Shown here: positions 3,395 through 64,000 of the stretch, piece after piece
Position numbering within the stretch: the first letter of the stretch is position 1
Layout of the letters: each line of letters opens with the position of its first letter
Assembly (NCBI RefSeq): GCF_963921235.1
Contig: NC_086115.1
Coordinates: 12,400,001-12,464,000, forward strand
DNA: 64,000 nt
Origin: Mobula hypostoma
Taxonomy: Eukaryota
Direction of reading: 5' to 3'
Notes under the pieces: generated by a model
The model's database searches: none
Seen by the model: only the letters and a program-made list of their open reading frames with translations
Told to the model about the DNA's origin: nothing
Position numbers and translations under genes: made by a program

Positions 3395-3750
3395 CTGAGA
3401 CCAGAACAAACGCCGGGTATTATAGGCCTAGAAACAAGAATTAGAAATGCGAGTCAGTATGGGAATTGCATGAGGAGTCTTGTGGTTATGTTCTGGTCAC
3501 CTCATTATAGGAAGGAGGAGGAAGCTTTAGGGAGGGTGCAGAGCAGATTTACCAGGATGTGGCCTGCATTCGAGAGCATGTCTTAGGAGCGGTACAGCAA
3601 GCTAGGACCTTTCTCTTTGGAGTGAATAAATATGAGCATGTCCAGATAGCAATGTATAACAGGCAAATATTCAGAAGACAGCCAGCACCTTTTACCGGGG
3701 TGGATATGTCCTTGAGTGAGCAGAATTTTAAAGTAAAGAAACAAGATTCT

Positions 3751-3985
3751 ACAAATCCAAAGCAACTCTCACAAAATGCTGTTGGAACTCAACAGGTCAG
3801 GCAGCATCTATGGAGAGGTATAAAGAGTTTGGTACATTTCGTGCCAAGACTGTTCATCGTGGCTTTTCTTCCTGAAAAACAAGTCCTGGTGAAGGGTCTT
3901 GGCCCAAAACGTTGACTCTTTATTCTTTTCCATAAATGCTGCCTGACCTGCTGAGTTCCTCTAGCAGCTGTGTGCGTCACTCATA
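3751..3985. mobile_element. Mini palindromic Penelope-derived element (older)
   Basis: Inverted PLE termini with a degenerate hammerhead at about 3883-3918. Confidence 0.6.
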
Positions 3986-4400
3986 ACCCTACAGTAAAGT
4001 GCTTGGAGGAAAGTCTAAGGGGGATGTCAGAGGTTTCTCTTCTACAGAGTGGTGGGTGGATGGAATGTACTGCCAGGGGTGATGGTAGAGGCCGATACAT
4101 AGGGACATAAAAGAGCCCCTTAGGTAGGCACCTGGATGGATGAAAAATGGAGGACAATGTGGGAGGGAAGCATTAGATTGATCCTGGATTAGGTTAAAAA
4201 GTTGGCACAACATTGTGAGCTGAAGGGCCAGTACTATGCTGATACTGTTCTACATTCTAGCTATCCTTTTATGGTTGACTGTAAACCTACCCTGTGTCCC
4301 ATTTTAAACACAAAATAATCTGCAGATGCTGTGATCAAAGCAACACTTTCAGTACGCTGGATGAACTCAGCAGGTCGGGCAGCATCAGTTAGAAATGATG

Positions 4401-4436
4401 AGTCGACGTTTCGGGCCGGAACCCCTCGTCAGGACT
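4401..4436 (-). ncRNA. Minimal hammerhead ribozyme motif (intact core)
   Basis: agtc-CTGACGA-ggggttccggccc-GAAAC-GTC-gact: stem I agtc/gact, stem II ggg/ccc, GUC cleavage triplet. Confidence 0.75.
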
Positions 4437-5710
4437 GAAGAATGAAAGATGGGGAAGGATTTGAAGAATGCTTGTAGCTTCAGTTGAAAGACCAGTAATT
4501 TGAAAGACAAAGGGGTGGGGGAGGGGAAGCATTGATGTCATAGCCCTGAAAACAATGGGTGGTAGAAGGAGGAGGCGGAACCATGAGGGAGCTGGGGGAG
4601 GAGGTAGAGTGAAATAGGGATAGAAGAAGGGAGGGGGAGGGAATTACCGGAAGTTGGAGAATTCTATGTTCATACCAAGGGGCTGGAGACTACCTAGATG
4701 GTATATGAGGTGTTGCTCCTCTAACCTGAGTTTAGCTTCATCATGGCAGTAGAGGAGGACATGTATGGACATATCTGAATGGGAGTGGGAAGCAGAGTAG
4801 AAGTGGGTGGCTACCGGGAGATCCTGTCTGTTGTGGCAGATGGAGTGGAGGTGCTTGACGAAGCGGTCCCCCAATCTGCGTCGGGTTTCACCGATGTAGA
4901 GGAGGCCGCACCGGGAGCACCGGATGCAATAGATGCAACAGACTCACAAGTGGTGTTGTCTCACCTGGAAGGACTGTTTGGGGCCCTGAATGGTTGCAAG
5001 AGATGAGGTATAGGGACAGGTGTACCACTTACGCTTACAGGGATAAGTGCCAGGTTGGAGATCTGATCTTTCCCCACTGACTTCCAACCTGGCACTTATC
5101 CCTGTAAGCGTAAGTGCTACACCTGTCCCTATACCTCATCTCTTGCAACCATTCAGGGCCCCAAACAGTCCTTCCAGGTGAGACAACACTTCACTTGTGA
5201 GTCTGTTGGGGTCATCTATTGCATCCGGTGCTCCCGGTGTGGCCTCCTCTACATCGATGAAACCCGACGCAGATTGGGGGACCGCTTCGTCAAGCACCTC
5301 CACTCCGTCCGCCACAACAGACAGGATCTCCCAGTAGCCACCCACTTCAACTCTGCTTCCCACTCCTATTCAGATATGTCCATACATGTCCTCCTCTACT
5401 GCCATGATGAGGCTAAACTCAGGTTGGAGGAGCAACACCTCATATACTGTCTAGGTAGTCTCCAGCCCCTTGGTATGAACATAGAATTCTCCAACTTCCG
5501 GTAATTCCCTCCTCCTCCCTTCCTCTATCCCTATTTCACTCCACCCCCTCCCCTAGCTCCCTCATGGTTTCGCCTCCTTCTTCTACCACCCATCGTTTCA
5601 AGGGCTATGACGTCATTCCTTCCCCTCCCGAACCCCTTTGTCTTTCAAATTACTGGTCTTTCAACTGATGCTACAAGTATTCTTCAAATCCTTCCCATCT
5701 TTCATTCTTC

Positions 5711-5746
5711 AGTCCTGATGAAGGGTTCCGGCCCGAAACGTTGACT
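5711..5746 (+). ncRNA. Minimal hammerhead ribozyme motif
   Basis: agtc-CTGATGA-agggttccggccc-GAAAC-GTT-gact; GUU triplet, likely from CpG decay. Confidence 0.65.
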
Positions 5747-6560
5747 CATCGTTTCTAACTGATGCTGCCCGACCTGCTGAGTTCATCCAGCGTACTGAAA
5801 GTGTTGCCGTGTCTCATTTGCTGCTGAATTTAAACCCTTCCTCATTTCATGAGCACACCTCCCCCAGGAGCATCTGCTGGCCCTGGACCTATACTCATTT
5901 GAATCTAGAAGAACGACAGGGGGAATCTGATTGAAACCTATAGATTATTGAAAGGTGACAAGTGGATGTGGAGGGGATGTTTCCTATAATGGGGGAGTCT
6001 AGAACCAGAGGGAAAGAACCTCAGAATAAAACAATGTCCCTTTAGAACAGGAATGAGAAGGAATTTCTTTAGCTACAGGGTGGTGAATCTTTGGAATTCA
6101 TTGTGGAGGCCACATCACTGGGTACATTAAAAGTGGAGGTTGATAGGTTCTTGATGACTATGGACATCAAAGGTTATGGGGAAAAGGCAGGAGAATGGGG
6201 TTGAGAGGGATAACAAATTAGCCATGATGGAATGGTGGAGCAAACTCGATGGGACAAATGGCCTAATTCTGCTCCTTTGTCTTACAGTCTATATCTAAAG
6301 GGTGATGGACCCTTCCAGTTCAGGTGGAGCTAGGCGAGCTTGCATCTCTCCTGTCTTTCCCAGAAGTCTACAGTCCTACTGCACATACCATCTTTATCGC
6401 CACACGTTCCTCTGACCTACGACCTTAGACCGCCGGCAGTGGCACCATGTGTATTTACAATGTGCCAATAAGTATCAGAGCGTGTGGGAGACATCCTATG
6501 ATATAGGTTAATCAGGAACTGTAAATTAACATTAGTGTGGGACAGATTACTGTAAGGATG

Positions 6561-8411: not shown

Positions 8412-10142
8412 AAGTTTATGGTAATTCAACCATATACATGTATACTGACAAACAAAACAACATTCCTCCAGATCAAGGTGCACAACCCAGTATATACTGT
8501 ATAACTCACGCACATAACACAAAGTAATATTGCCAGAAATAAATTAGAAGAAGAGAGAATCAGGTTTATTGTCACCCACATGTGTCATGAAATTTAACTT
8601 AGCAGCAGCAGTTCAATCCAATACATAATATAGAAGAAGAAAAACAATAATAATAAATAAATAGTAAGTCAATTACAGTATACATATATTGAATAGATTA
8701 AAACTCCCGCAAAAACAGAAATAATATATATTAAAAGTGTGAGGTCATGTTCATGGACTCAATGTCCATTTAGGAATCAAATGGCAGAGGGAAGAAGCTG
8801 TTCCTGAATCGCTGAGTGTGTGCCTTCAGGCTACTGTACCTCCTACCTGATGGTAACAGTGAGAAAGGGCATGCCCTGGGTGCTGGGGATCCTTAATAAT
8901 GGACTCTGCCTTTCTGAGACACCGCTCCTTGAAGATGTCCTGGGTACTTTGTAGACTAGTACCCAAGATGGAGCCGACTAAATTTAAAACTCTCTGCAGC
9001 TTCTTTCAGTCCTGTGCAGTAGCCCCGCCCCCCCATACCAGACAGTGATGCAGCCTGTCAGAATGCTCTCCACAGTACAACTATAGAAGCTTTTGACTGT
9101 ATTTGTTGACATACCAAATCTTTTCAAACTGCCAATGAAGTACCTTGCCTTCTTTATAACTGCATTAATATTAAGGTGCATTTATCGCACGTTAAAAAGT
9201 AAACAACATAACGCTACTTGAACTTCAGGTGTGATGAGAGCTGGGTGCTGGCAGAGAGTTCAGTAGACTTACGGCCTGCAGGAAGAAGCTGTTTCCCCTC
9301 GTAACAATTCTTGTCCAAATGCTATGGTACCTCCTGCCTTCTGGTAGGGGGGAAGGGGTCAACGAGATTGTTCGATAGACGGGAGGCATCATTGACATTG
9401 CTAAAGATCCTGTGTATACACGCTCCTAAAATCTTTGACGGGTGCAAGGAAGACCCCGATGATCCTCTCAGCAGTTCTTGTTGTGGTCAGATGCCTTGTA
9501 ATTCCCCATACCAGACAGCGAAACAGTTGGCCAGGACACTCTCAATAGAGCCCCTGCAAAAATTGGTAAAAATAGGGGAAGGGGGAAGCTTTGCTCGCCT
9601 TAGTCTCCTCAGTAATTGGAGATGCTGCTGTGCTTCCTTGGCTAAAGAGGTGTTGTTGAGGGACCAGATGAGACTGTCCAGAAATCTGGTGTTCCTAACT
9701 CTCTCTACAGAGGAGCTGTTCATGTGCAGTGAGGAGTAGTCAACCTGTACCTTCCTAAGGTCCACTATCATCTCTTTGGTCTTGTCCACCTTGAGACTCA
9801 AGTTGTTGTGCTTGCACCATTCTGCTGGCAACTTCACCTCCTCTCTATACGCCATCTCATCGTCATTTTGCTGAGGCCACCCACTGTCGCGTCATCAGCG
9901 AACCTGATGATTCCCGTTGAACTGGATCAAGCAATGCAGTGGGCTAAGAACAAGGCCCTGGCGAACACCAGTGCTCAGCATGATGGAACTAGAGATCTTT
10001 CTGCCAACGTGGACTGACAGTGCCCTTTCTGTCCAAATTCAGTTAGAGAGAGAGGTGTTGAGACCCAATGATGATGGTTTACCCACCAGCTTCTGAGGGA
10101 TGATCATATTAAATGCCGAGCTAAAGTCACTGAAGGCGTATT

Positions 10143-10428
10143 GTTAAAGTTAAAGTCTGTCCCGAGCCTTATAGGCTCATCAGGCCGGTGCTTATGCTGG
10201 TTTCCATGGCGTGAAGCGAATGAGAGTATGAGACTCCGGACGCCAGTCTAACACGAGGTTAACCCCCAGCATTTTGCCAGTACCCATTTTCAGCTGGGTG
10301 GACTGGAGCAGTGTGTGGTTAACTGCCTTGCTCAAGGACACAACATGCTGCTTCGGCTGGGGCTCGAACTCACAACCTTCAGATCGCTAGTCCAACACCC
10401 TAACTACTTGGCCACGGGCCACACACCC
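10143..10428 (-). mobile_element. tRNA-derived SINE
   Basis: Pol III A/B boxes on the minus strand (gtggccaagtagtt; gagttcgagccc). TSD ggcgtattg / ggcgtactg. Confidence 0.7.
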
Positions 10429-10711
10429 TGGCGTACTGAGGCACCATTTTCCAGGTAGAACAGGACAGAGTGGTGTGCAGAGACTATGGCGTCATCAGTG
10501 GACTGAATTGAGCAAAAAGCAAACTGGAAAGCATTCAATGTAGAAGGAAGATGGGATTGGGACTTAATGCAATTGATAACCAGCCACTCAAAGCAGTTCA
10601 TTATTATTGACAAAAACAACAGGAATTCTGCAGATGCTGGAAATTCAAGCAACATACATCAAAGTTGCTGGTGAACGCAGCAGGCCAAGCAGCATCTATA
10701 GGAAGAGGCGC

Positions 10712-10747
10712 AGTCGACGTTTCAGGCCGAGACCCTTCATCAGGACT
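10712..10747 (-). ncRNA. Minimal hammerhead ribozyme motif (intact core)
   Basis: agtc-CTGATGA-agggtctcggcct-GAAAC-GTC-gact. Confidence 0.75.
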
Positions 10748-12021
10748 AACTGAAGGAAGAGTGAGTAAGGGATTTGAAAGCTGGAGGGGGAGGGGGAGAT
10801 GCAAAATGATAGGAGAAGACAGGAGGGGGAGGGATAGAGCCGAGAGCTGGACAGGTGATAGGCAAAAGGGGATACGAGAGGATCATGGGACAGGAGGTCC
10901 GGGAGGAAAGACAAGGAGGGGGGGTGACCCAGAGGATGGGCAAGAGGTATATTCAGAGGGACAGAGGGAGAAAAAGGAGAGTGAGAGAAAGAATGTGTGC
11001 ATAAAAATGAGTAACAGATGGGGTACGAGGGGGAGGTGGGGCCTAGCGGAAGTTAGAGAAGTCAATGTTCATGCCATCAGGTTGGAGGCTACCCAGACGG
11101 AATATAAGGTGTTGTTCCTCCAACCTGAGTGTGGCTTCATCTTTACAGTAGAGGAGGCCGTGGATAGACATGTCAGAATGGGAATGGGATGTGGAATTAA
11201 AATGTGTGGCCACTGGGAGATCCTGCTTTCTCTGGCGGACAGAGCGTAGATGTTCAGCAAAGCGGTCTCCCAGTCTGCGTCGGGTCTCACCGAATTAGAC
11301 CGCTTAGACGGATAAGTGCCAGGAGGGAGGAACAAGTGCTACACATGCCCTTACACTTCCTCCCTTACCACCATTCAGGGCCCCGAACAGTCCTTCCAGG
11401 TGAGGCATCACTTCACCTGTGAGTCGACTGGGGTGATATACTGCGTCCGGTGCTCCCGATGTGGCCTTTTATATATTGGTGAGACCCGACGCAGACTGGG
11501 AGACCGCTTTGCTGAACATCTACGCTCTGTCCGCCAGAGAAAGCAGGATCTCCCAGTGGCCACACATTTTAATTCCACATCCCATTCCCATTCTGACATG
11601 TCTATCCACGGCCTCCTCTACTGTAAAGATGAAGCCACACTCAGGTTGGAGGAACAACACCTTATATTCCATCTGGGTAGCCTCCAACCTGATGGCATGA
11701 ACATTGACTTCTCTAACTTCTGCTAGGCCCCACCTCCCCCTCGTACCCCATCTGTTACTCATTTTTATGCACACATTCTTTCTCTCACTCTCCTTTTTCT
11801 CCCTCTGTCCCTCTGAATATACCTCTTGCCCATCCTCTGGGTCACCCCCCCTCCTTGTCTTTCCTCCCAGACCTCCTGTCCCATGATCCTCTCGTATCCC
11901 CTTTTGCCTATCACCTGTCCAGCTCTCGGCTCTATCCCTCCCCCTCCTGTCTTCTCCTATCATTTTGCATCTCCCCCTCCCCCTCCAACTTTCAAATCCC
12001 TTACTCACTCTTCCTTCAGTT

Positions 12022-12057
12022 AGTCCTGACGAAGGGTCTCGGCCTGAAACGTCGACT
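12022..12057 (+). ncRNA. Minimal hammerhead ribozyme motif (intact core)
   Basis: agtc-CTGACGA-agggtctcggcct-GAAAC-GTC-gact. Confidence 0.75.
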
Positions 12058-13460
12058 GCGCCTCTTCCTATAGATGCTGCTTGGCCTGCTGCGTTCACCA
12101 GCAACTTCGATGTATGTTGCTCATTATTATTGACATCAGTGCCACTGGGCCATAGTCGTCGAGGCAGGTCACAGTCGCCATCTTGGGCACAGGGATGATG
12201 GTGGCCACCTTGGAGTCTGAGGGGGCAGTGGACAGTTCCAGAGAGATGTTGAAGATGCCTGTTCGAACCTCTTTTAACTGGGCTGCGCAGTCTGTCAGCA
12301 GCTGACCAGGTATGCAGTCAGATCCCGCAGTTTTACGTGGGTTGGCCCTGGCCAGGGTTTTCCTCACATCAGCTGTGACCAGATAGAGTGCCTACCACTT
12401 GGGGGTATGGGTGAGGTGGAAGGGGTTCCGTCCTCACTGGCACATTGTTCGGTGCATCAAACCCAGCGTACAAGAGATTTAGCCCATCAGGAAGAGAGGC
12501 ACCATTGTCGTTGACGTGCAGGTTTGTACTCCTTTGTGATCTGAAAGCCCTGTCGCATGTGCCTCGTGTCGCTGGTGTCACAGAAATGGGTGTATATTCT
12601 CTGTGAATAATCTTGCTTTGCTCTCCTGATGGTGTGGGAAAGCACAGCCCTTGCTGACTTATCCCCCGATCTCAAGGGCGGCCTACTTCCTTCACAAATT
12701 TCAAAGATGTACGGGTTTGTAGGTTCATTGGTTACTTGTGTGTAATGGATGGCACAGGCTTGGTGGGCCGGAAGGGAGAGAACGAGAGAGAGGGAGAGAA
12801 TAGAAAGAGAAAGAAGGTAAGAAAGAACAAAGCCAAGTCAAATCAAGTGAAGTTTATTGTCATTTAACTATATACATGTACATAATCATATAATGTATAT
12901 AGAAATGAGACAACGTTTCTTTGAACTGGGGTGTAAAGCACAGAAGTACACAGACGTTGAATATATCCGTCAACACCTCCATCAGCTGGGCTGTGCAGTC
13001 TTTCAGAACCCAGCCTGGTATACTATTGGGCCCTGCAGCTTTGCGCGGATTGACTCTGGCCAGGGTCTTTCTCACCTCAGGTTCAGCAAGAGCATCTGCT
13101 CCCCTGGGGGGGAGGGGTGCCTTCCTTGCCAACACTGGGCGTGGAAGGCATTCACCCTCTCAGGAAGTGAGGCGTCCTGCTTACTGACGCGCAGGGTAGA
13201 CTTGTACTCTGTAATCCTCTGAATTCCCTGCCACGTGTGCCTCACGTCTCTGGTATCGCAGAAGCGGCTGTAACTTCTCTGAGGATGCTCCCATTTCGCC
13301 AGTATCACGATCCCTCAGTCATGCAAGGACCTCTGCATGGCTTCTGATTTGCCCCCACCCAGATGTGTTTCACGTTGGTAACATCCTCAGTCACAGAATC
13401 CACATATTCAGCATGGTTGCCTCCCTGAACATTATCCAGTTAGTATTATCAAAGGAAAGG

Positions 13461-13706
13461 AAAGGTACGTCGCATCTGGTTAGCGGACGATTTCCCTCCA
13501 TGCCTCTCTGACGTAGTGAGGAACCACGTACGAGGCAAGTTACAGCAGTGGTTTGCCCTTGCCTTCTGCCAGGTGAGTTTCCAAAGAGATCACCAGCTCG
13601 TAATCCCGCACGGGTGGAAAGCGTGCAGGGGAGCCGGCTGGATTCGAACTCGGGACCTTTCGTCCCGAAGTCCGGCACTGATGCCACTACACCACCAACT
13701 GGGGTC
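13461..13706 (-). mobile_element. tRNA-derived SINE
   Basis: A box ggtgtagtgg, B box gagttcgaatcc. TSD agtatt(a/g)tcaaaggaaagg on both sides. Confidence 0.8.
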
Positions 13707-25882: not shown

Positions 25883-26277
25883 ACATGACAAGTTTTACAC
25901 TGTACTTCGATATTTGTGACAATGATAATCTGGACTTCCCCCGACATTCCCATAACCTGTGTTACCCACAACAGCCCTTGGCTTCCCACCTGTACCTGCT
26001 CTGACCAGCTCGGCAGGGGAGACAATCGCTGGAGACACGAGGTTGCAGAATGCGGAGCAACGCGCAATCTGTTGGAGAAATCCGGCCGCTGGAACGGCCG
26101 AGCTCCTCCAGCCGATCTCATGGGGCAAGTCCCCCACGAGTTGGCCATTTCGGCTCGGTTCGGTTCTGACGAGTTCCATTGACCTGAAAACATACACTGT
26201 TTCTCCCACCGTAGACACTGAGCATCCCCAGCACCTCACGTTTTTATTTCACGTTTCCAACATCGCCAGCTTTATTT

Positions 26278-26481
26278 TAAACACAAGAGATTCTGCAGAT
26301 GCTGGAAATCCTGAGCAACAAATACAGCACGCTGGAGGAACTCTGCAGGTCAGACAGCGTCCATGGAGAGGACGAAATCGTCGAGTCCGGATGAAGGGTC
26401 TCGGCCCTGAACGTCGACTGTTTTCCTTCTCCGCGGATGCTGCCTGACCTGCTGAGTTCTTCCAACATTTTGTGTTCGTTG
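26278..26481. mobile_element. Mini palindromic Penelope-derived element
   Basis: Inverted copies of the PLE terminus, with the tail on the left arm only. TSD cagctttattt / cagatttattt. Degenerate hammerhead. Confidence 0.75.
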
Positions 26482-26513
26482 CAGATTTATTTGCTTTGCC
26501 TTTCTGGCCGTAC

Positions 26514-26593: not shown

Positions 26594-27293
26594 GGATTCT
26601 GTACCGCCTCTTCACTTCACACAATGCTCAGCCGGGAAGCCACCTGGAAGCCCATCCGAGTGTGTGTAAATCAAAAGGACAACAGCGTGAAACGATGCTA
26701 TCAAACCTAATCGCAGCTGGGATGCAGCTTTGCTGTGCCCAGTTCCCGAACTGCGGCGGGGGAAGTATTTTTAAGAGGGTGACGCATCCCCTGTGGTTGC
26801 TAGTGTCCCAGACCCAGCGTCGCAGCAAGCGGTTGTCAAGGACGCAGTTTTGATCCCACCTATTGTACAGTGTCCTCTCACGGGAGACGCACAAGGGCGC
26901 AATTTTTACGCGAGTTATAGATTGCAATTGCAAAAATAAAATCCCCAAGGACGATGCATTTACCCGGGCAATGAAAGCAAATTTTAATTACATTTTCAAA
27001 GGAATGAAAATTGACTGGACGGGGTACAAACCGAATCCGCTTTTAGTCCTAGTCGCTGGAAATCCAAACAACAAACACAAAATGTTGGAGAAACTTAGGA
27101 GGTCAAGCAGCATCTATGGAAAAGAGTAAACTGTCGACGTTTCGGGACATGACCCTTCTTCAGGAGTGACAAGGATGTCAGAATAAAAAGGTGGGGGGAA
27201 GGGAAATAGGCTGACTGGAAGGTGACATCCTCTATTCGATGAGATCTTTCCCAGTCTGAGCCAAAGACGTTGGCTGTCCATCTCCCGCCATAG

Positions 27294-28620
<1,327 letters not shown>

Positions 28621-46937: not shown

Positions 46938-47084
46938 GTATATGTACTTTGATAATAAATTTTACTTTGATTTGAAATATCCCTCTGACAAACTGAGATG
47001 TCTGAAAAGAACATCTTGAGTTGTATACTGTCAATATTTAGTTCAGTGGTAGGCCTGTCAGACTTCAGTTGAAGTGTGATTCTT

Positions 47085-47700
47085 GGCGTTGTTTATCCTT
47101 GCAAGCAGAACAAGTGCTACACCTGCCCCTACACCTCCTCCCTCACTAACATTCAGGGCCCCAAACAGTCCTTCCAGGTGAGTCTGTTGGGGTCATATAC
47201 TGTGTTTGGTGCTCCCAATGTGGCCTCTTGTATATCGGTGAGACCCAATGTAGATTGAGAGACAGCTTCACCAAGCACCTGTGCTCCATCTGCCAGAACA
47301 AGTGGGATCTGCCAGTGGCCTCCCATTTTAATTCCACTTCCCATTCCCATTCTGATATGTCCATCTATGACTTCCCCCAGTCAGGATAAGGCCACACTTA
47401 GGTTGGAAGAACAACATCTTTATATTCTGTTTGGGTGGCCTCCAACCTGATGGCATGAACATCGATATCTCAAATTTCCAGCAATGCCTCTCTTCCCCCC
47501 CCGCCCCACCTTCACCATTTCCCATCCCCTTGTTCCTCTCTCATGTTATCTCCTTGCCTGCCCATTGCCTCCCTCTTGTGTTCTTCCCCTGAAATGTCGA
47601 CTACTTTTTTCCATAGATGCTGGTCTTGTGAGTTCCTCCAGCATTTTGTGTATGTTGTGTATGATTCTCAGCATCTGCAGATTTTCTTTTCTTTCTTGCT
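47085..47700 (+). mobile_element. Penelope-like element 3' fragment (GIY-YIG remnant)
   Basis: KCYTCPYTSSLT.IQGPKQSFQV, the same family as 11316-11726; ends in the PLE terminus. Confidence 0.75.
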
Positions 47701-61050: not shown

Positions 61051-63788
61051 CATTTTCTGCAAGTATAAATCTGCCAAACTACTGTTTAGCATTTGATAAA
61101 TTTTCTAACATGACCTGTTTCAGCGCTCTGTTTATATTATTTATAATGTTTAATGATATGATTTGGGGTGATTGAGGGGGAAAATATGGGACCCAGTCCA
61201 GAGTGGTTAGATAAGCACGTGGATGAAAGAAAAATGAAGGGCTGTGTAGGAAGAAAGGGTTAGATTGAGTAGGTTTAAAGGTCAGCACAACATCATGAGC
61301 TGAAGGGCTGTATTGTGCTATGTTCTATGGTTTTTGAGCCCATTGTTGGGGTGATGGCCTTGCTCCATCACACCAGAGCCCTTGACAAGATTGGAGCCAA
61401 TCCTGGGCAAACCATGATCAATTATCACCTTGAGATAGAGAGGCTTGTGTGTTCCTGAGATATCAGGAGCGATGCCATCTGCAGTTTAGTCATCTGATGC
61501 ATAGCTCTGGTAGGGAGAAAGGTGGAGGTTCCAGACAAAGAGTGATCAAACCGAGACTTTAACAGTGGAGCTGGTGGAAGATGATGGCACATCACAATGT
61601 GGTATAGGCAGAGGAGGGCTGCAGCAGCGAAGGGTCCCCTGTCATCTCGCATTCTATGCCACTGAACCCTGACCCCGACCCCGATATGTCAAGGACTATG
61701 TAGTGGCTGACCGTGCATCAGCCTCCCAATGTTAAAGTCATACATGGGCATTCTTCACTAGGGCACCAATAGACAACCTCTTAGGAGCACATCTTACTCA
61801 ACTCAAATGATCACACTACTCCTGCTTAATTGTTGTTAACCTCAAACACTGCCAATCTTAGATTCTTGTCCAGAAGTGCAGGATATGTTAGCAGATCCTG
61901 AAGTATTGCACAGCTCTGAGGAACAAATGACTGATCCTTTCCCGTTAGCTCTTACTTATTCCTACCAGATTTGTGTCGACAGCAGATCTGGACACATTGT
62001 GCTTGGTTTTCTCTAAACTATTGATCCCATCTCAGCAAGTTCTAGACCCCCATCACTATGGGTGAGGGAGAAATGCTCTATCTCTCTTACTTACTCTGTC
62101 AGCCTCCCTTGTCCCCATAATTGTATACATACTAATTAAATGGCTCCTTTGCTTCAACTTCATCCTTTCCAATTTTTGTTCAAAATTGCAAATTTTCCTG
62201 TTCTGGCAACATCCTTATAAACCTCATCTGCATCCTCCCAACTTCCCTGTAATGTCCTGACTAGAACTATTAGTAGTAATTGTGTATAGTGAATAGTAGT
62301 ACTTGGTTAGCATGGATGAGTTGGGCTGCAGGACCGGTTTCCATGCTGAATAATAGACTACTCAAGCTCTATTCAGTCCTCTCATAGACGTTGCTTGTCA
62401 TGGTTTGTTCTGTGCCTTGACAAATATAAACAGAACATCTATATGCCCTATTTAACCACCACTTTGACCTGTACTACCACTAAGGATTAGTGGAAGCAGA
62501 TCCCAATATTCTTTTTCTTCACTTTTCAATCCCAGGAGTGGTGGTAGAAGGAAATATAGAGAGGTCATTTAAGAAACTCTTTAAAAAGACATGGATGATT
62601 GAAAATGGAGGTCTATGTGGGAGGGAAGGTTTAGGTTGATGTTAAGAGTAGGTTAAAAGGTTGGCACAACATCGTGGGCTGAAGGGCCTGTACTGTGCTG
62701 TAATGTTTGGTTCCATGATATTTATTGTGTATTACCCCAGGTTTTTTAAAGATTGTTTCATTTGCCATTTTTATGCCCAGCAGAGTAGACCAGCTACACT
62801 TTCTTGCAGTATAAAGTTTAAAAATATATGCCACAGTAACCACACAGCCAAGTTTATATCACTGCGAATTAATCTAACATTTCTCTTTTACTTCGAAGTC
62901 ATATTGTACTGAACTCTGTACAATATATAATTGAAATAATCTCAGAGTTACTAAAGCTGCAGAGCTAACTTTGGATCCAATTTGATGCTTTCCCATGATT
63001 CCAGCGGGCTGTTACTTTGACCAGTCTCTAATTTTGGAACTTGTCAAATATTCTGCTGATGTCCATGTGGGCCATGTCAAACACACTGCCATCATGAATT
63101 ATTGTTGCCTCAAAGAAAAACAAAACCCATTACAAATCGATTGCTGCTCTAAACGCCAGTGGCGTAACAGGCAGTAACTAACTAACTTATAAATCCATGA
63201 TTAATTGCTGCCCTTCTAAATGAAGATTTATCCCATCCATACCAACATAGATACAAATGCAAAGAAGGTTATTTTTCAATAGGAGCTTGAGGAGATTTGG
63301 TGTGTCACCAAAGACTAACATATTTCTATTAATGTACCATTGAGAGCATTCTAACTAATTGCATCACAGTCTGGTATTGAGGTGCCATTTATTAGGATTG
63401 GAAGAAGCTGCGGAGAATTGTAAACACAGCCGGCACTAGCATCACCACCATCAATGAAACCTTCAAATCAGCACTTCAAAAAGGCAGCATCCATTATTAA
63501 GGAACTCCACCACTTGGGATATGCCCTCTTCACACTGCTACCGTCAAGGAGGAGGTACAGGAGCCTGAAGGTGCACACTCAACATTGTAGAAATAGCCTC
63601 TCCTTGTCCTGATAAAGGGCTTCTGCTGGAAACATTGGCTCCTTACTCCACTCCACAGATGCTGCCTGACCTGTTGAGTTCCTCCAGCATTGTGTGTTCT
63701 CCTCCTCTGCCATCAGATTTCTGAATGGTCCATGGACACTACCTCACTATTTTGTTCTCTTTTTGCATGACTTAGTTTTTTTTTATAT

Positions 63789-63992
63789 AAACGCAAGAAA
63801 TTCTGCAGATGCTGGAAATCCAAAGCAACACTCACAAAATTCTGGAGGAGCTCAGCACATTGTGCAGCATCTATGGAAATGAATAAACAGTTGTTGTTTT
63901 GGGACAAGACAGTTCGCACTAAAACGTCAACTATTTATTTCTATTGATGTTGCTTGACTTGCTGAGTTCCTCCAGCATTTTGTGTGTGTTGC
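63789..63992. mobile_element. Mini palindromic Penelope-derived element
   Basis: Same architecture: tail plus gcaacac... on the left; right arm ends ...gtgttgc. Confidence 0.7.
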
Positions 63993-64000
63993 TATTTTTA

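What the first reader, a model, noticed from the sequence alone, without database searches (positions are those of the whole stretch)
10598..12135. Penelope-like retroelement inserted as one TSD-bounded 1.5-kb palindrome with a one-sided 36-nt tail
Seen: two near-identical ~640-bp inverted arms with both 3' ends pointing outward. A perfect 15-bp TSD flanks the whole unit and splits an older LINE. The left arm has 36 extra terminal nt (10613-10648) that the right arm lacks. The centre holds a short inverted fragment (11296-11328). Established: PLEs (GIY-YIG plus RT) form direct or inverted pseudo-LTRs with a short 3' tail. Inference: the palindrome arose in a single integration event, by template switching or dual priming. 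The second arm ends at a fixed site (gttgc) rather than at a random position.
Basis: partly seen in the sequence, partly recalled or inferred. Interest (0 to 1): 0.8.

Follow-up and report, generated by a model that had tools for sequence, protein, structure and literature searches.

The report
Textbook fold-back Penelope retrotransposon insertion
This is a real, recently inserted, hairpin-shaped scrap of a Penelope-like jumping gene in a ray genome. Its shape (two inverted 3' ends, one target duplication, a short tail on one side only) is already described for this class, so it is a clean example, not a discovery.

Summary
There are two 644-nt inverted arms with 6 mismatches, and a perfect 15-bp target-site duplication (TSD) around the whole unit. 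The left arm alone carries a 35-36-nt tail, and the right arm ends at GTTGC. The insert splits a LINE reverse-transcriptase (RT) frame that closes exactly when the insert is removed.

New here:
- A 305-nt contig from a related organism's sequencing run joins the two flanks with one TSD copy. This is the empty site, so the whole palindrome arrived in one event.
- Five of the six arm differences are CpG transitions, so the arms were identical at birth.
- The "central fragment" is the inner end of the left arm, next to a ~134-nt deletion.
- The window holds 24 Penelope-like element (PLE) 3' ends. They stop either at GTTGC or about 35 nt further on.
- All six head-to-head pairs combine one tailed and one tailless arm of nearly equal length.

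This architecture is published (Arkhipova 2013; Craig 2021). Frangieh 2024 showed in vitro that a PLE protein nicks and extends both strands from two adjacent internal start sites, and that the tail is the stretch between them. This scan has already noted the same shape many times elsewhere in this genome. Novelty is low. What stays open is whether the two arms come from dual priming or from snap-back.

The parts
10598..10612 (.). Left copy of the 15-bp target-site duplication (TCATTATTATTGACA)
   Evidence: It is present once in the empty-site contig of run X5.
10613..10648 (-). One-sided PLE 'tail', 35-36 nt, at the outer (3') end of the left arm and absent from the right arm
   Evidence: Homologous tails of 32-37 nt occur on 10-12 other copies in the window.
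10649..11298 (-). Left (inverted) arm. It holds the 3' part of the GIY-YIG coding region and the 3' UTR. It is 99% identical to 11478-12120.
10713..10743 (-). Minimal hammerhead (min-HHR) motif of the left arm: CUGAUGA, helix II, GAAAC, then GUC followed by the predicted cleavage point
   Evidence: The features match the PMC4209133 descriptor by inspection. Rfam did not call it.
11299..11331 (-). Inner (5'-most) end of the left arm. It is the reverse complement of the element segment just upstream of the right arm's start, and a ~134-nt deletion separates it from the rest of the left arm. The fold-back junction lies at about 11330.
   Evidence: plus the loose-end consensus at 11329.
11330..12120 (+). 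Right (direct) arm: a 5'-truncated PLE copy ending at GTTGC, with no tail
11316..11726 (+). ORF remnant encoding the C-terminal GIY-YIG endonuclease domain of the PLE (136 aa plus stop)
   Evidence: (PF01541, 24.4 bits).
12026..12056 (+). Minimal hammerhead motif of the right arm (CUGACGA variant at core position 7)
12121..12135 (.). Right copy of the 15-bp target-site duplication
10404..10612 (-). Downstream half of the interrupted LINE reverse-transcriptase frame
12136..12367 (-). Upstream half of the interrupted LINE reverse-transcriptase frame

Best explanation
A Penelope-like element (PLE) ribonucleoprotein made one integration at an ATT-rich site inside an old LINE. It left a 5'-truncated head-to-head fold-back: two inverted copies of the element's last ~0.65-0.8 kb (end of the GIY-YIG domain, then the 3' UTR with a minimal hammerhead), inside a single 15-bp TSD.

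Shown here:
- One event, proved by an empty site in a related organism.
- Arms identical at birth.
- Two fixed outer end points 35-36 nt apart.
- Inner ends of the two arms within ~30 nt of each other.

Inferred from published biochemistry of the Anolis element PAc: the GIY-YIG endonuclease nicked both strands 15 bp apart. Both target 3'-OH ends primed reverse transcription on the element's 3' region, one from the distal start site (giving the tailed arm) and one from the proximal start site at GTTGC (giving the tailless arm). A template switch joined the two cDNAs at their inner ends, and host repair finished the job.

Within the single-event reading I favour dual priming, probably with both RTs on one RNA, over snap-back of a single cDNA, by roughly 55:35. 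The confidence given is for the single-event canonical PLE fold-back reading, not for that sub-mechanism.

The insert is now dead: it has no RT and only a truncated EN ORF.
For: - Structure. GIY-YIG.
- Empty site: run X5 record 17 joins 10597 to 12121 with one TSD copy. The filled left junction is covered with no mismatch by X1 record 3 (10437-10631).
- 5 of 6 arm mismatches are CpG transitions.
- Bimodal ends across 24 copies in the window.
- Six of six head-to-head pairs in the window have one tailed and one tailless arm. Five have nearly equal arm lengths; pair e could not be placed. Solo copies split about 6 tailed to 6 tailless, two of the latter unclear.
- TSDs of 15/15, 10/11 and 10/11 for three pairs.
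- Literature. Inverted pLTR, single TSD and a 31-bp tail on one inverted pLTR: PMC3846280. The tail is often at only one end: PMC8557442, Fig. 2. PAc cleaves and extends both strands, starts RT at two adjacent internal sites with the tail being the stretch between them, and prefers ATT: PMC11167929.
Against: - Nothing contradicts the single-event PLE reading.
[quoted passage not shown] So the strict one-of-each pattern is not predicted by that work.
- Near-equal arm lengths need the extra assumption that both RTs run on one RNA.
- Which arm is contiguous with the loop differs between pairs: the tailed arm in this insert and probably in pairs b and f, the tailless arm in pair d.
- The RT domain is absent from this copy, so its PLE identity rests on the EN domain, the hammerhead motif, the tail and the architecture.
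- Run X1 may be the sample the assembly came from.
Confidence: 0.88

Rival explanations
1. Single priming followed by snap-back. One target 3'-OH primed cDNA synthesis from the distal site, giving the tailed arm. The RT stopped ~0.8 kb in, the cDNA 3' end folded back on itself, and the return synthesis copied the first arm outward. It stopped or jumped to the other target end at the GTTGC/tail boundary.
For: The inner ends of the two arms lie within 5-35 nt of each other in five of the six pairs, whatever the arm length (60 nt to 0.75 kb); pair e could not be placed. In this insert the tailed arm reaches ~30 nt further in, as expected for the first-made strand. Self-priming was proposed for PLE inverted junctions in PMC3846280.
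Against: It needs an ad hoc reason for the return strand always to stop ~36 nt before the end of its template. In pair d (26274-26482) the loop is contiguous with the tailless arm. In vitro both strands are nicked and extended.
Confidence: 0.3
2. The palindrome was not made at this site. A pre-existing palindromic master copy was transcribed as a unit, and the whole unit was re-inserted by ordinary target-primed reverse transcription starting at GTTGC.
For: An earlier follow-up in this scan (s1-141886) concluded that a 242-bp fold-back of this class had been re-copied as a unit. That mechanism would reproduce 'tailed arm, tailless arm, TSD' without a new fold-back event.
Against: A 644-bp perfect RNA hairpin is a poor RT template. 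Other genomic copies mostly continue normally upstream of position 11329, not into the fold-back (60 contigs). A search for the centre junction in public runs listed none, which is uninformative because even the source organism's runs were not listed.
Confidence: 0.08
3. Two independent PLE insertions landed head-to-head, or a single insertion was later duplicated in inverted orientation by a DNA-level rearrangement.
For: PLE 3' ends are extremely abundant here: 24 in 64 kb, with very high summed read depth. Chance adjacency does therefore happen.
Against: One perfect 15-bp TSD encloses both arms and there is no inner TSD. The empty site in organism B lacks both arms at once. The arms are 99% identical with mainly CpG decay. 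The same pattern recurs in six of six pairs.
Confidence: 0.02
4. Assembly artefact: a fold-back chimeric long read or a mis-join of repeats.
For: Palindromes of high-copy repeats are hard to assemble. No listed contig spans the whole unit or its centre.
Against: An artefact would not produce a TSD, a one-sided tail homologous to those of other copies, six arm differences that are mostly CpG transitions, or an asymmetric central deletion. The left junction is covered without mismatch by a short-read contig of organism A.
Confidence: 0.01

Closest known systems
Pen2a_Av and related Penelope copies of Adineta vaga (Arkhipova et al. 2013, PMC3846280)
   Same: An inverted terminal repeat lies head-to-head with the direct copy. 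The whole insert sits inside one short TSD (9-10 bp there). A characteristic ~31-bp tail is present at the 3' end of only one of the inverted repeats. An empty site was used there too, to prove one-step insertion of a pLTR-flanked unit.
   Different: Those copies keep a full ORF plus a direct pLTR. Here both arms are 5'-truncated inside the EN domain, so the insert is a bare fold-back of 3' ends (0.65-0.8 kb arms) in a cartilaginous fish.
PAc (Poseidon of Anolis carolinensis) in vitro system (Frangieh et al. 2024, PMC11167929)
   Same: GIY-YIG/RT protein. AT-rich (ATT) target. Both strands are nicked and extended. RT starts at two adjacent internal sites, and the spacing between them equals the genomic tail. 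A hammerhead motif lies in the terminal repeat.
   Different: That work did not follow the products to complete fold-backs, and it saw no strand preference for the two start sites. The ray copies show a strict one-of-each pairing in this window. The ray start sites lie in GU-rich RNA (TTGTGT-like) and not in an AC-rich stem-loop.
General PLE insertion scheme, including Naiad and Chlamys (Craig et al. 2021, PMC8557442, Fig. 2)
   Same: [quoted passage not shown] It also says a 30-40-bp tail is often present at only one end of the insertion.
   Different: None in kind. This is one more instance.
L1 twin-priming 5' inversions (from my own knowledge: Ostertag and Kazazian 2001)
   Same: Both nicked target strands prime reverse transcription, and the result is an inverted segment inside one TSD.
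   Different: Twin priming copies adjacent, non-overlapping parts of one RNA and leaves a poly(A) at one end. Here both arms are copies of the same 3' terminal 644 nt and there is no poly(A).

Membership tests
Canonical EN+ Penelope-like element (Penelope/Poseidon-type) | C-terminal GIY-YIG endonuclease domain | tested here: met
   Pfam PF01541, 24.4 bits against a cut-off of 22.6, for 11316-11723. The nearest Atlas clusters are eukaryotic GIY-YIG proteins.
Canonical EN+ Penelope-like element (Penelope/Poseidon-type) | PLE-clade (telomerase-like) reverse transcriptase upstream of EN | not tested
   Both arms are 5'-truncated at the start of the EN region, so this copy has no RT. I did not fetch full-length relatives.
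Canonical EN+ Penelope-like element (Penelope/Poseidon-type) | Head-to-head inverted terminal copy, with the whole unit inside one TSD of variable length | tested here: met
   plus the empty site. TSDs of 15, 11 and 11 bp in three pairs of the window.
Canonical EN+ Penelope-like element (Penelope/Poseidon-type) | 30-40-bp 'tail' extension at only one end of the insertion | tested here: met
   35-36 nt at 10613-10648 only. The same holds in all six pairs of the window.
Canonical EN+ Penelope-like element (Penelope/Poseidon-type) | Minimal type-I hammerhead motif in the terminal repeat: CUGANGA core, an extra nucleotide after position 9, helix II closed next to GAAA, a palindromic 15.2-16.2 step, and a short helix I | tested here: inconclusive
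   The motif is present on both arms and fits the PMC4209133 descriptor by inspection (AGUC/GACU helix I, ACGU palindrome). In this copy the 11.1 position is U (G-U). Rfam gave no hit, and cofolding neither supports nor refutes it. Activity was not tested.
Canonical EN+ Penelope-like element (Penelope/Poseidon-type) | AT-rich target preference | tested here: met
   The TSD contains ATT three times. The flank consensus next to tails of other copies is A/T-rich. Compare the ATT preference in PMC11167929.
L1-type twin-priming inversion | The inverted and direct segments derive from adjacent, non-duplicated parts of the RNA, with a poly(A) at the direct end | tested here: not met
   Both arms carry the same 644 nt. 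There is no poly(A) at either end.
MITE / foldback DNA transposon | Symmetric terminal inverted repeats, a family-specific fixed-length TSD, and no retroelement-derived body | tested here: not met
   The arms are 3' ends of a retroelement ORF and UTR. The ends are asymmetric (tail). TSD length varies from 11 to 15 bp.
Retrozyme (non-LTR, hammerhead tandem repeats) | Tandem direct repeats, each bounded by a hammerhead and able to give a circular RNA | tested here: not met
   The two hammerhead motifs are on opposite strands of an inverted repeat, not in tandem.

The most novel reading that the evidence does not exclude
The strict pairing of one tailed with one tailless arm (6 of 6 fold-backs in this window, while solo copies split about evenly) and the near-equal arm lengths would mean that fold-backs are made by two RT subunits of one dimeric RNP. 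Both would work on the same RNA, one from each of the two adjacent start sites. The trailing enzyme would displace the leading cDNA and then switch onto it. On this reading the 35-37-nt tail is the physical spacing of the two initiation sites in the dimer. That rule is not stated in the PLE papers I read.
Probability: 0.2. Interest if true: 0.5.

Novelty: already known. Interest (0 to 1): 0.2.

Why it matters
For the question asked, the answer is that the finding is ordinary. It is a very clean, datable vertebrate example of the published PLE insertion architecture, with an empty site in a sister taxon. Its use is practical. Loci like this, and this genome's thousands of similar ones, could serve as a natural data set for deciding how PLEs build inverted arms, dual priming or snap-back. 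The 2024 in vitro work left that step open.

Tried and rejected
- Rfam scan of 9500-13500 at E<=1: no hammerhead hit. The min-HHR has no helix III hairpin, so this is not evidence against the motif.
- Folding of the terminal 141 nt as RNA: z-score 0.11. RNAalifold on ten tailed copies gave only a weak stem at -2.7 kcal/mol. I therefore claim no conserved stem-loop at the start sites.
- RNAcofold of the hammerhead region as a dimer did not reproduce the hammerhead fold. This is uninformative.
- Pfam on the short LINE pieces flanking the insert gave no RVT_1 hit. Only ALKBH8_N was found further downstream. The LINE assignment rests on frame continuity and Atlas neighbours.
- A second run search with the 81-nt centre junction listed none, not even the source organism's runs. 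The 're-copied master' rival could therefore not be tested.
- ARAGORN found no tRNA in the high-copy repeat at 10300-10440.
- The idea that the arm contiguous with the loop would always be the same arm (which would separate the models) did not hold across pairs.
- Considered and rejected: two independent insertions, DNA-level inverted duplication, assembly artefact, L1-style twin priming, MITE, retrozyme. Reasons are given under the rival explanations and the membership tests.

Full report
**1. Observation**

- The repeat finder reports inverted arms 10648-11291 and 11478-12121, 644 nt, 99% complementary, 186 nt apart. It also reports a 15/15 direct repeat, TCATTATTATTGACA, at 10598-10612 and 12121-12135 (sequence).
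- The pairwise alignment shows the right arm ending at GTTGC (12116-12120), directly against the TSD.
- The left arm, read in reverse complement, continues for another 35-36 nt (10613-10648) before its TSD copy. One base is ambiguous, because the T at 12121 could belong to either the tail or the TSD.
- A 15-nt perfect repeat at two fixed positions is not a chance event (about 4^-15).

**2. What the arms are**

- The + strand ORF 11316-11726 matches Pfam GIY-YIG above the curated cut-off (24.4 against 22.6 bits). Its nearest Atlas clusters are eukaryotic GIY-YIG proteins.
- After the stop codon comes a ~390-nt 3' UTR. It carries a 31-nt motif, CTGAYGA-AGGGTCTCGGCCT-GAAAC-GTCGAC, found on both arms (12026-12056 on +, 10713-10743 on -).
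- By inspection this motif fits the minimal, dimer-dependent hammerhead described for metazoan PLE terminal repeats in PMC4209133. It has the core CUGANGA, an extra nucleotide after position 9, GAAA, a palindromic ACGU step in place of a helix III hairpin, and a 4-bp helix I (AGUC/GACU).
- Rfam does not call it and thermodynamic cofolding is uninformative. I treat the hammerhead as a motif-level match only.
- Neither arm contains RT sequence. Both are 5'-truncated at the start of the endonuclease region.

**3. The target**

- Deleting 10613-12135 in silico joins the minus-strand ORFs 12095-12367 and 10404-10655 into one unbroken frame (..DDYGPVAL|MSIIMNCFEWLV..).
- Atlas neighbours of the upstream piece are 'RNA-directed DNA polymerase' and RVT_1 clusters of chordates.
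- The same strand further on carries an ALKBH8_N match at 9490-9855. From my own knowledge, this Pfam family is commonly hit by fish LINE RTs.
- The insert therefore does split an older LINE.

**4. One event, with an empty site**

I laid public contigs of four runs on 10300-12450.
- In run X5 (organism B, a different species label from the best holder), a 305-nt contig at single-copy-like depth maps 10437-10597 and 12121-12263 contiguously, with 3 mismatches.
- In run X1 (organism A), a 195-nt contig covers 10437-10631 without a mismatch, so it crosses the TSD-to-tail junction. X1 may be the sample the assembly came from, so it is not independent support.
- Of the six arm differences, five are CpG to TpG/CpA transitions. 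This is what post-insertion decay of two initially identical arms would give.
- Arm divergence (0.93%) is about the same as the A-B flank divergence (about 1%). The insertion therefore dates to roughly the A/B split, as a rough estimate from small numbers.
- Two independent insertions, a later DNA-level duplication and an assembly artefact are all made very unlikely by these points.

**5. The centre**

- Contigs from other genomic copies continue upstream of position 11329 with a 30-nt consensus (loose ends). Its reverse complement is what stands at 11299-11331.
- The left arm therefore reaches ~30 nt further into the element than the right arm, which starts at about 11330. It has a ~134-nt internal deletion next to the junction.
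- Without that deletion the two arms would meet almost end to end. I cannot tell whether the deletion arose during integration (a template jump) or later (palindrome-centre instability).

**6. Is the end point fixed? A census within the window**

- BLAST with terminal modules found 24 PLE 3' ends in the 64 kb.
- Printed in register and aligned to tailed references, their ends fall into two classes. One class ends at or within a few nt of the GTTGC position. The other ends 29-37 nt further on, after a conserved tail (..GGATTTCCAGCATCTGCAG..TTGTGTTTA). Two tails are decayed or partial (3744-3814 and 27055-27175).
- Six copies pair up head-to-head:
  - a: 3744-3966
  - b: 4305-5807, a second large palindrome from a subfamily 78% identical to this one
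  - c: this finding
  - d: 26274-26482
  - e: 27055-27340
  - f: 63788-63993
- In all six pairs, one arm is tailed and the other ends at the GTTGC position.
- Solo copies split about evenly: 6 tailed, and 6 tailless of which two are unclear. If the arms chose independently at 50:50, six of six mixed pairs would have p of about 0.016. This is rough, because mini fold-backs may have been re-copied as units.
- Inner ends lie within about 5-35 nt of each other in every pair but e, whatever the arm length.
- TSDs abut the tail on one side and GTTGC on the other in pair b (10/11) and pair d (10/11).

**7. Comparison with what is known**

This is the published PLE architecture.
- Arkhipova et al. [quoted passage not shown] They used an allelic empty site to prove one-step insertion of a pLTR-flanked unit.
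- Craig et al. [quoted passage not shown]
- Frangieh et al. 2024 (PMC11167929) purified an Anolis PLE protein and showed four things. It cleaves ATT-rich DNA. It nicks and extends both strands. Reverse transcription starts at two adjacent internal sites. [quoted passage not shown]
- The TSD here contains ATT three times.
- This scan has already noted the same shape repeatedly in this genome. Two follow-ups reached the same verdict.

**8. Mechanism**

Shown:
- one event;
- two fixed outer ends;
- arms identical at birth;
- inner ends close together.

Inferred:
- staggered nicks 15 bp apart;
- priming from both target 3'-OH ends, one at each start site;
- a cDNA-to-cDNA template switch at the inner ends;
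- host fill-in.

I favour dual priming, probably with both enzymes on one RNA. That would explain both the one-of-each rule and the near-equal arms, and it fits the in vitro data. Snap-back of a single cDNA explains the equal arms equally well, but it needs an ad hoc stop 36 nt before the end of its template. Which arm is contiguous with the spacer differs between pairs, so the window cannot decide. A third possibility, re-insertion of a palindromic master as a unit, could not be tested.

**9. Verdict**

The novelty class is 'already known'. The only mildly new element is quantitative: the strict one-tailed/one-tailless pairing and the near-equal arms. A genome-wide census could turn this into a discriminating test of the integration mechanism.

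Noticed in passing
window 4305-5807: A second large PLE palindrome from a subfamily 78% identical to the first. Its arms are ~0.75 kb and differ at 33 of 705 compared positions. It has a 35-nt tail on the left arm only, and its right arm ends at GTTGC. The TSD is GTGTC[C/T]CATTT (10/11). It has the same architecture but is older.
   Followed up: partly
window 3744-3966, 26274-26482, 27055-27340, 63788-63993: Four mini fold-backs built only from PLE 3' termini (arms of ~60-120 nt), each with one tailed and one tailless arm. In pair d the junction sits at the hammerhead cleavage-site palindrome GTCGAC.
   Followed up: partly
all six head-to-head pairs in the window: In all six pairs the tailed arm is the left (minus-strand) arm (two-sided p of about 0.03). 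Solo copies show no strand bias. This could be chance, or it could be a replication- or transcription-direction effect on which nick uses which start site. Another note of this scan (s1-142373) describes the tail on the other side elsewhere, so it is not a genome-wide rule.
   Followed up: no
ends of the 24 PLE 3' modules, e.g. 12109-12120 and 10613-10624: The two end (RT start) sites sit in similar local sequence: ..TTGTGTGTTGC at the proximal site and ..CTTGTGTTTA at the distal site. The start motif looks duplicated 35-37 nt apart. The RNA here is GU-rich, unlike the AC-rich stem-loop reported for the Anolis element.
   Followed up: no
window 10300-10440: A very high-copy repeat (summed contig depth 10^5-10^6) lies inside the same LINE, next to the PLE target. 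It looks like a SINE head on the minus strand, but ARAGORN calls no tRNA there.
   Followed up: partly
window 10739 / 12030 and the helix II closing pair: The two arms differ at hammerhead core position 7 (U against C, a CpG transition). Both carry U in place of the family-typical C at position 11.1, which gives G-U in place of the conserved G10.1-C11.1 pair. This copy's ribozyme may therefore be weakened.
   Followed up: no
window 47082-47690: A solo, tailed, 5'-truncated PLE copy whose 5' end lies at about the same element position (start of the EN region) as the inner ends of both large palindromes. This hints at a preferred stop, or an RNA 5' end, at that position.
   Followed up: no
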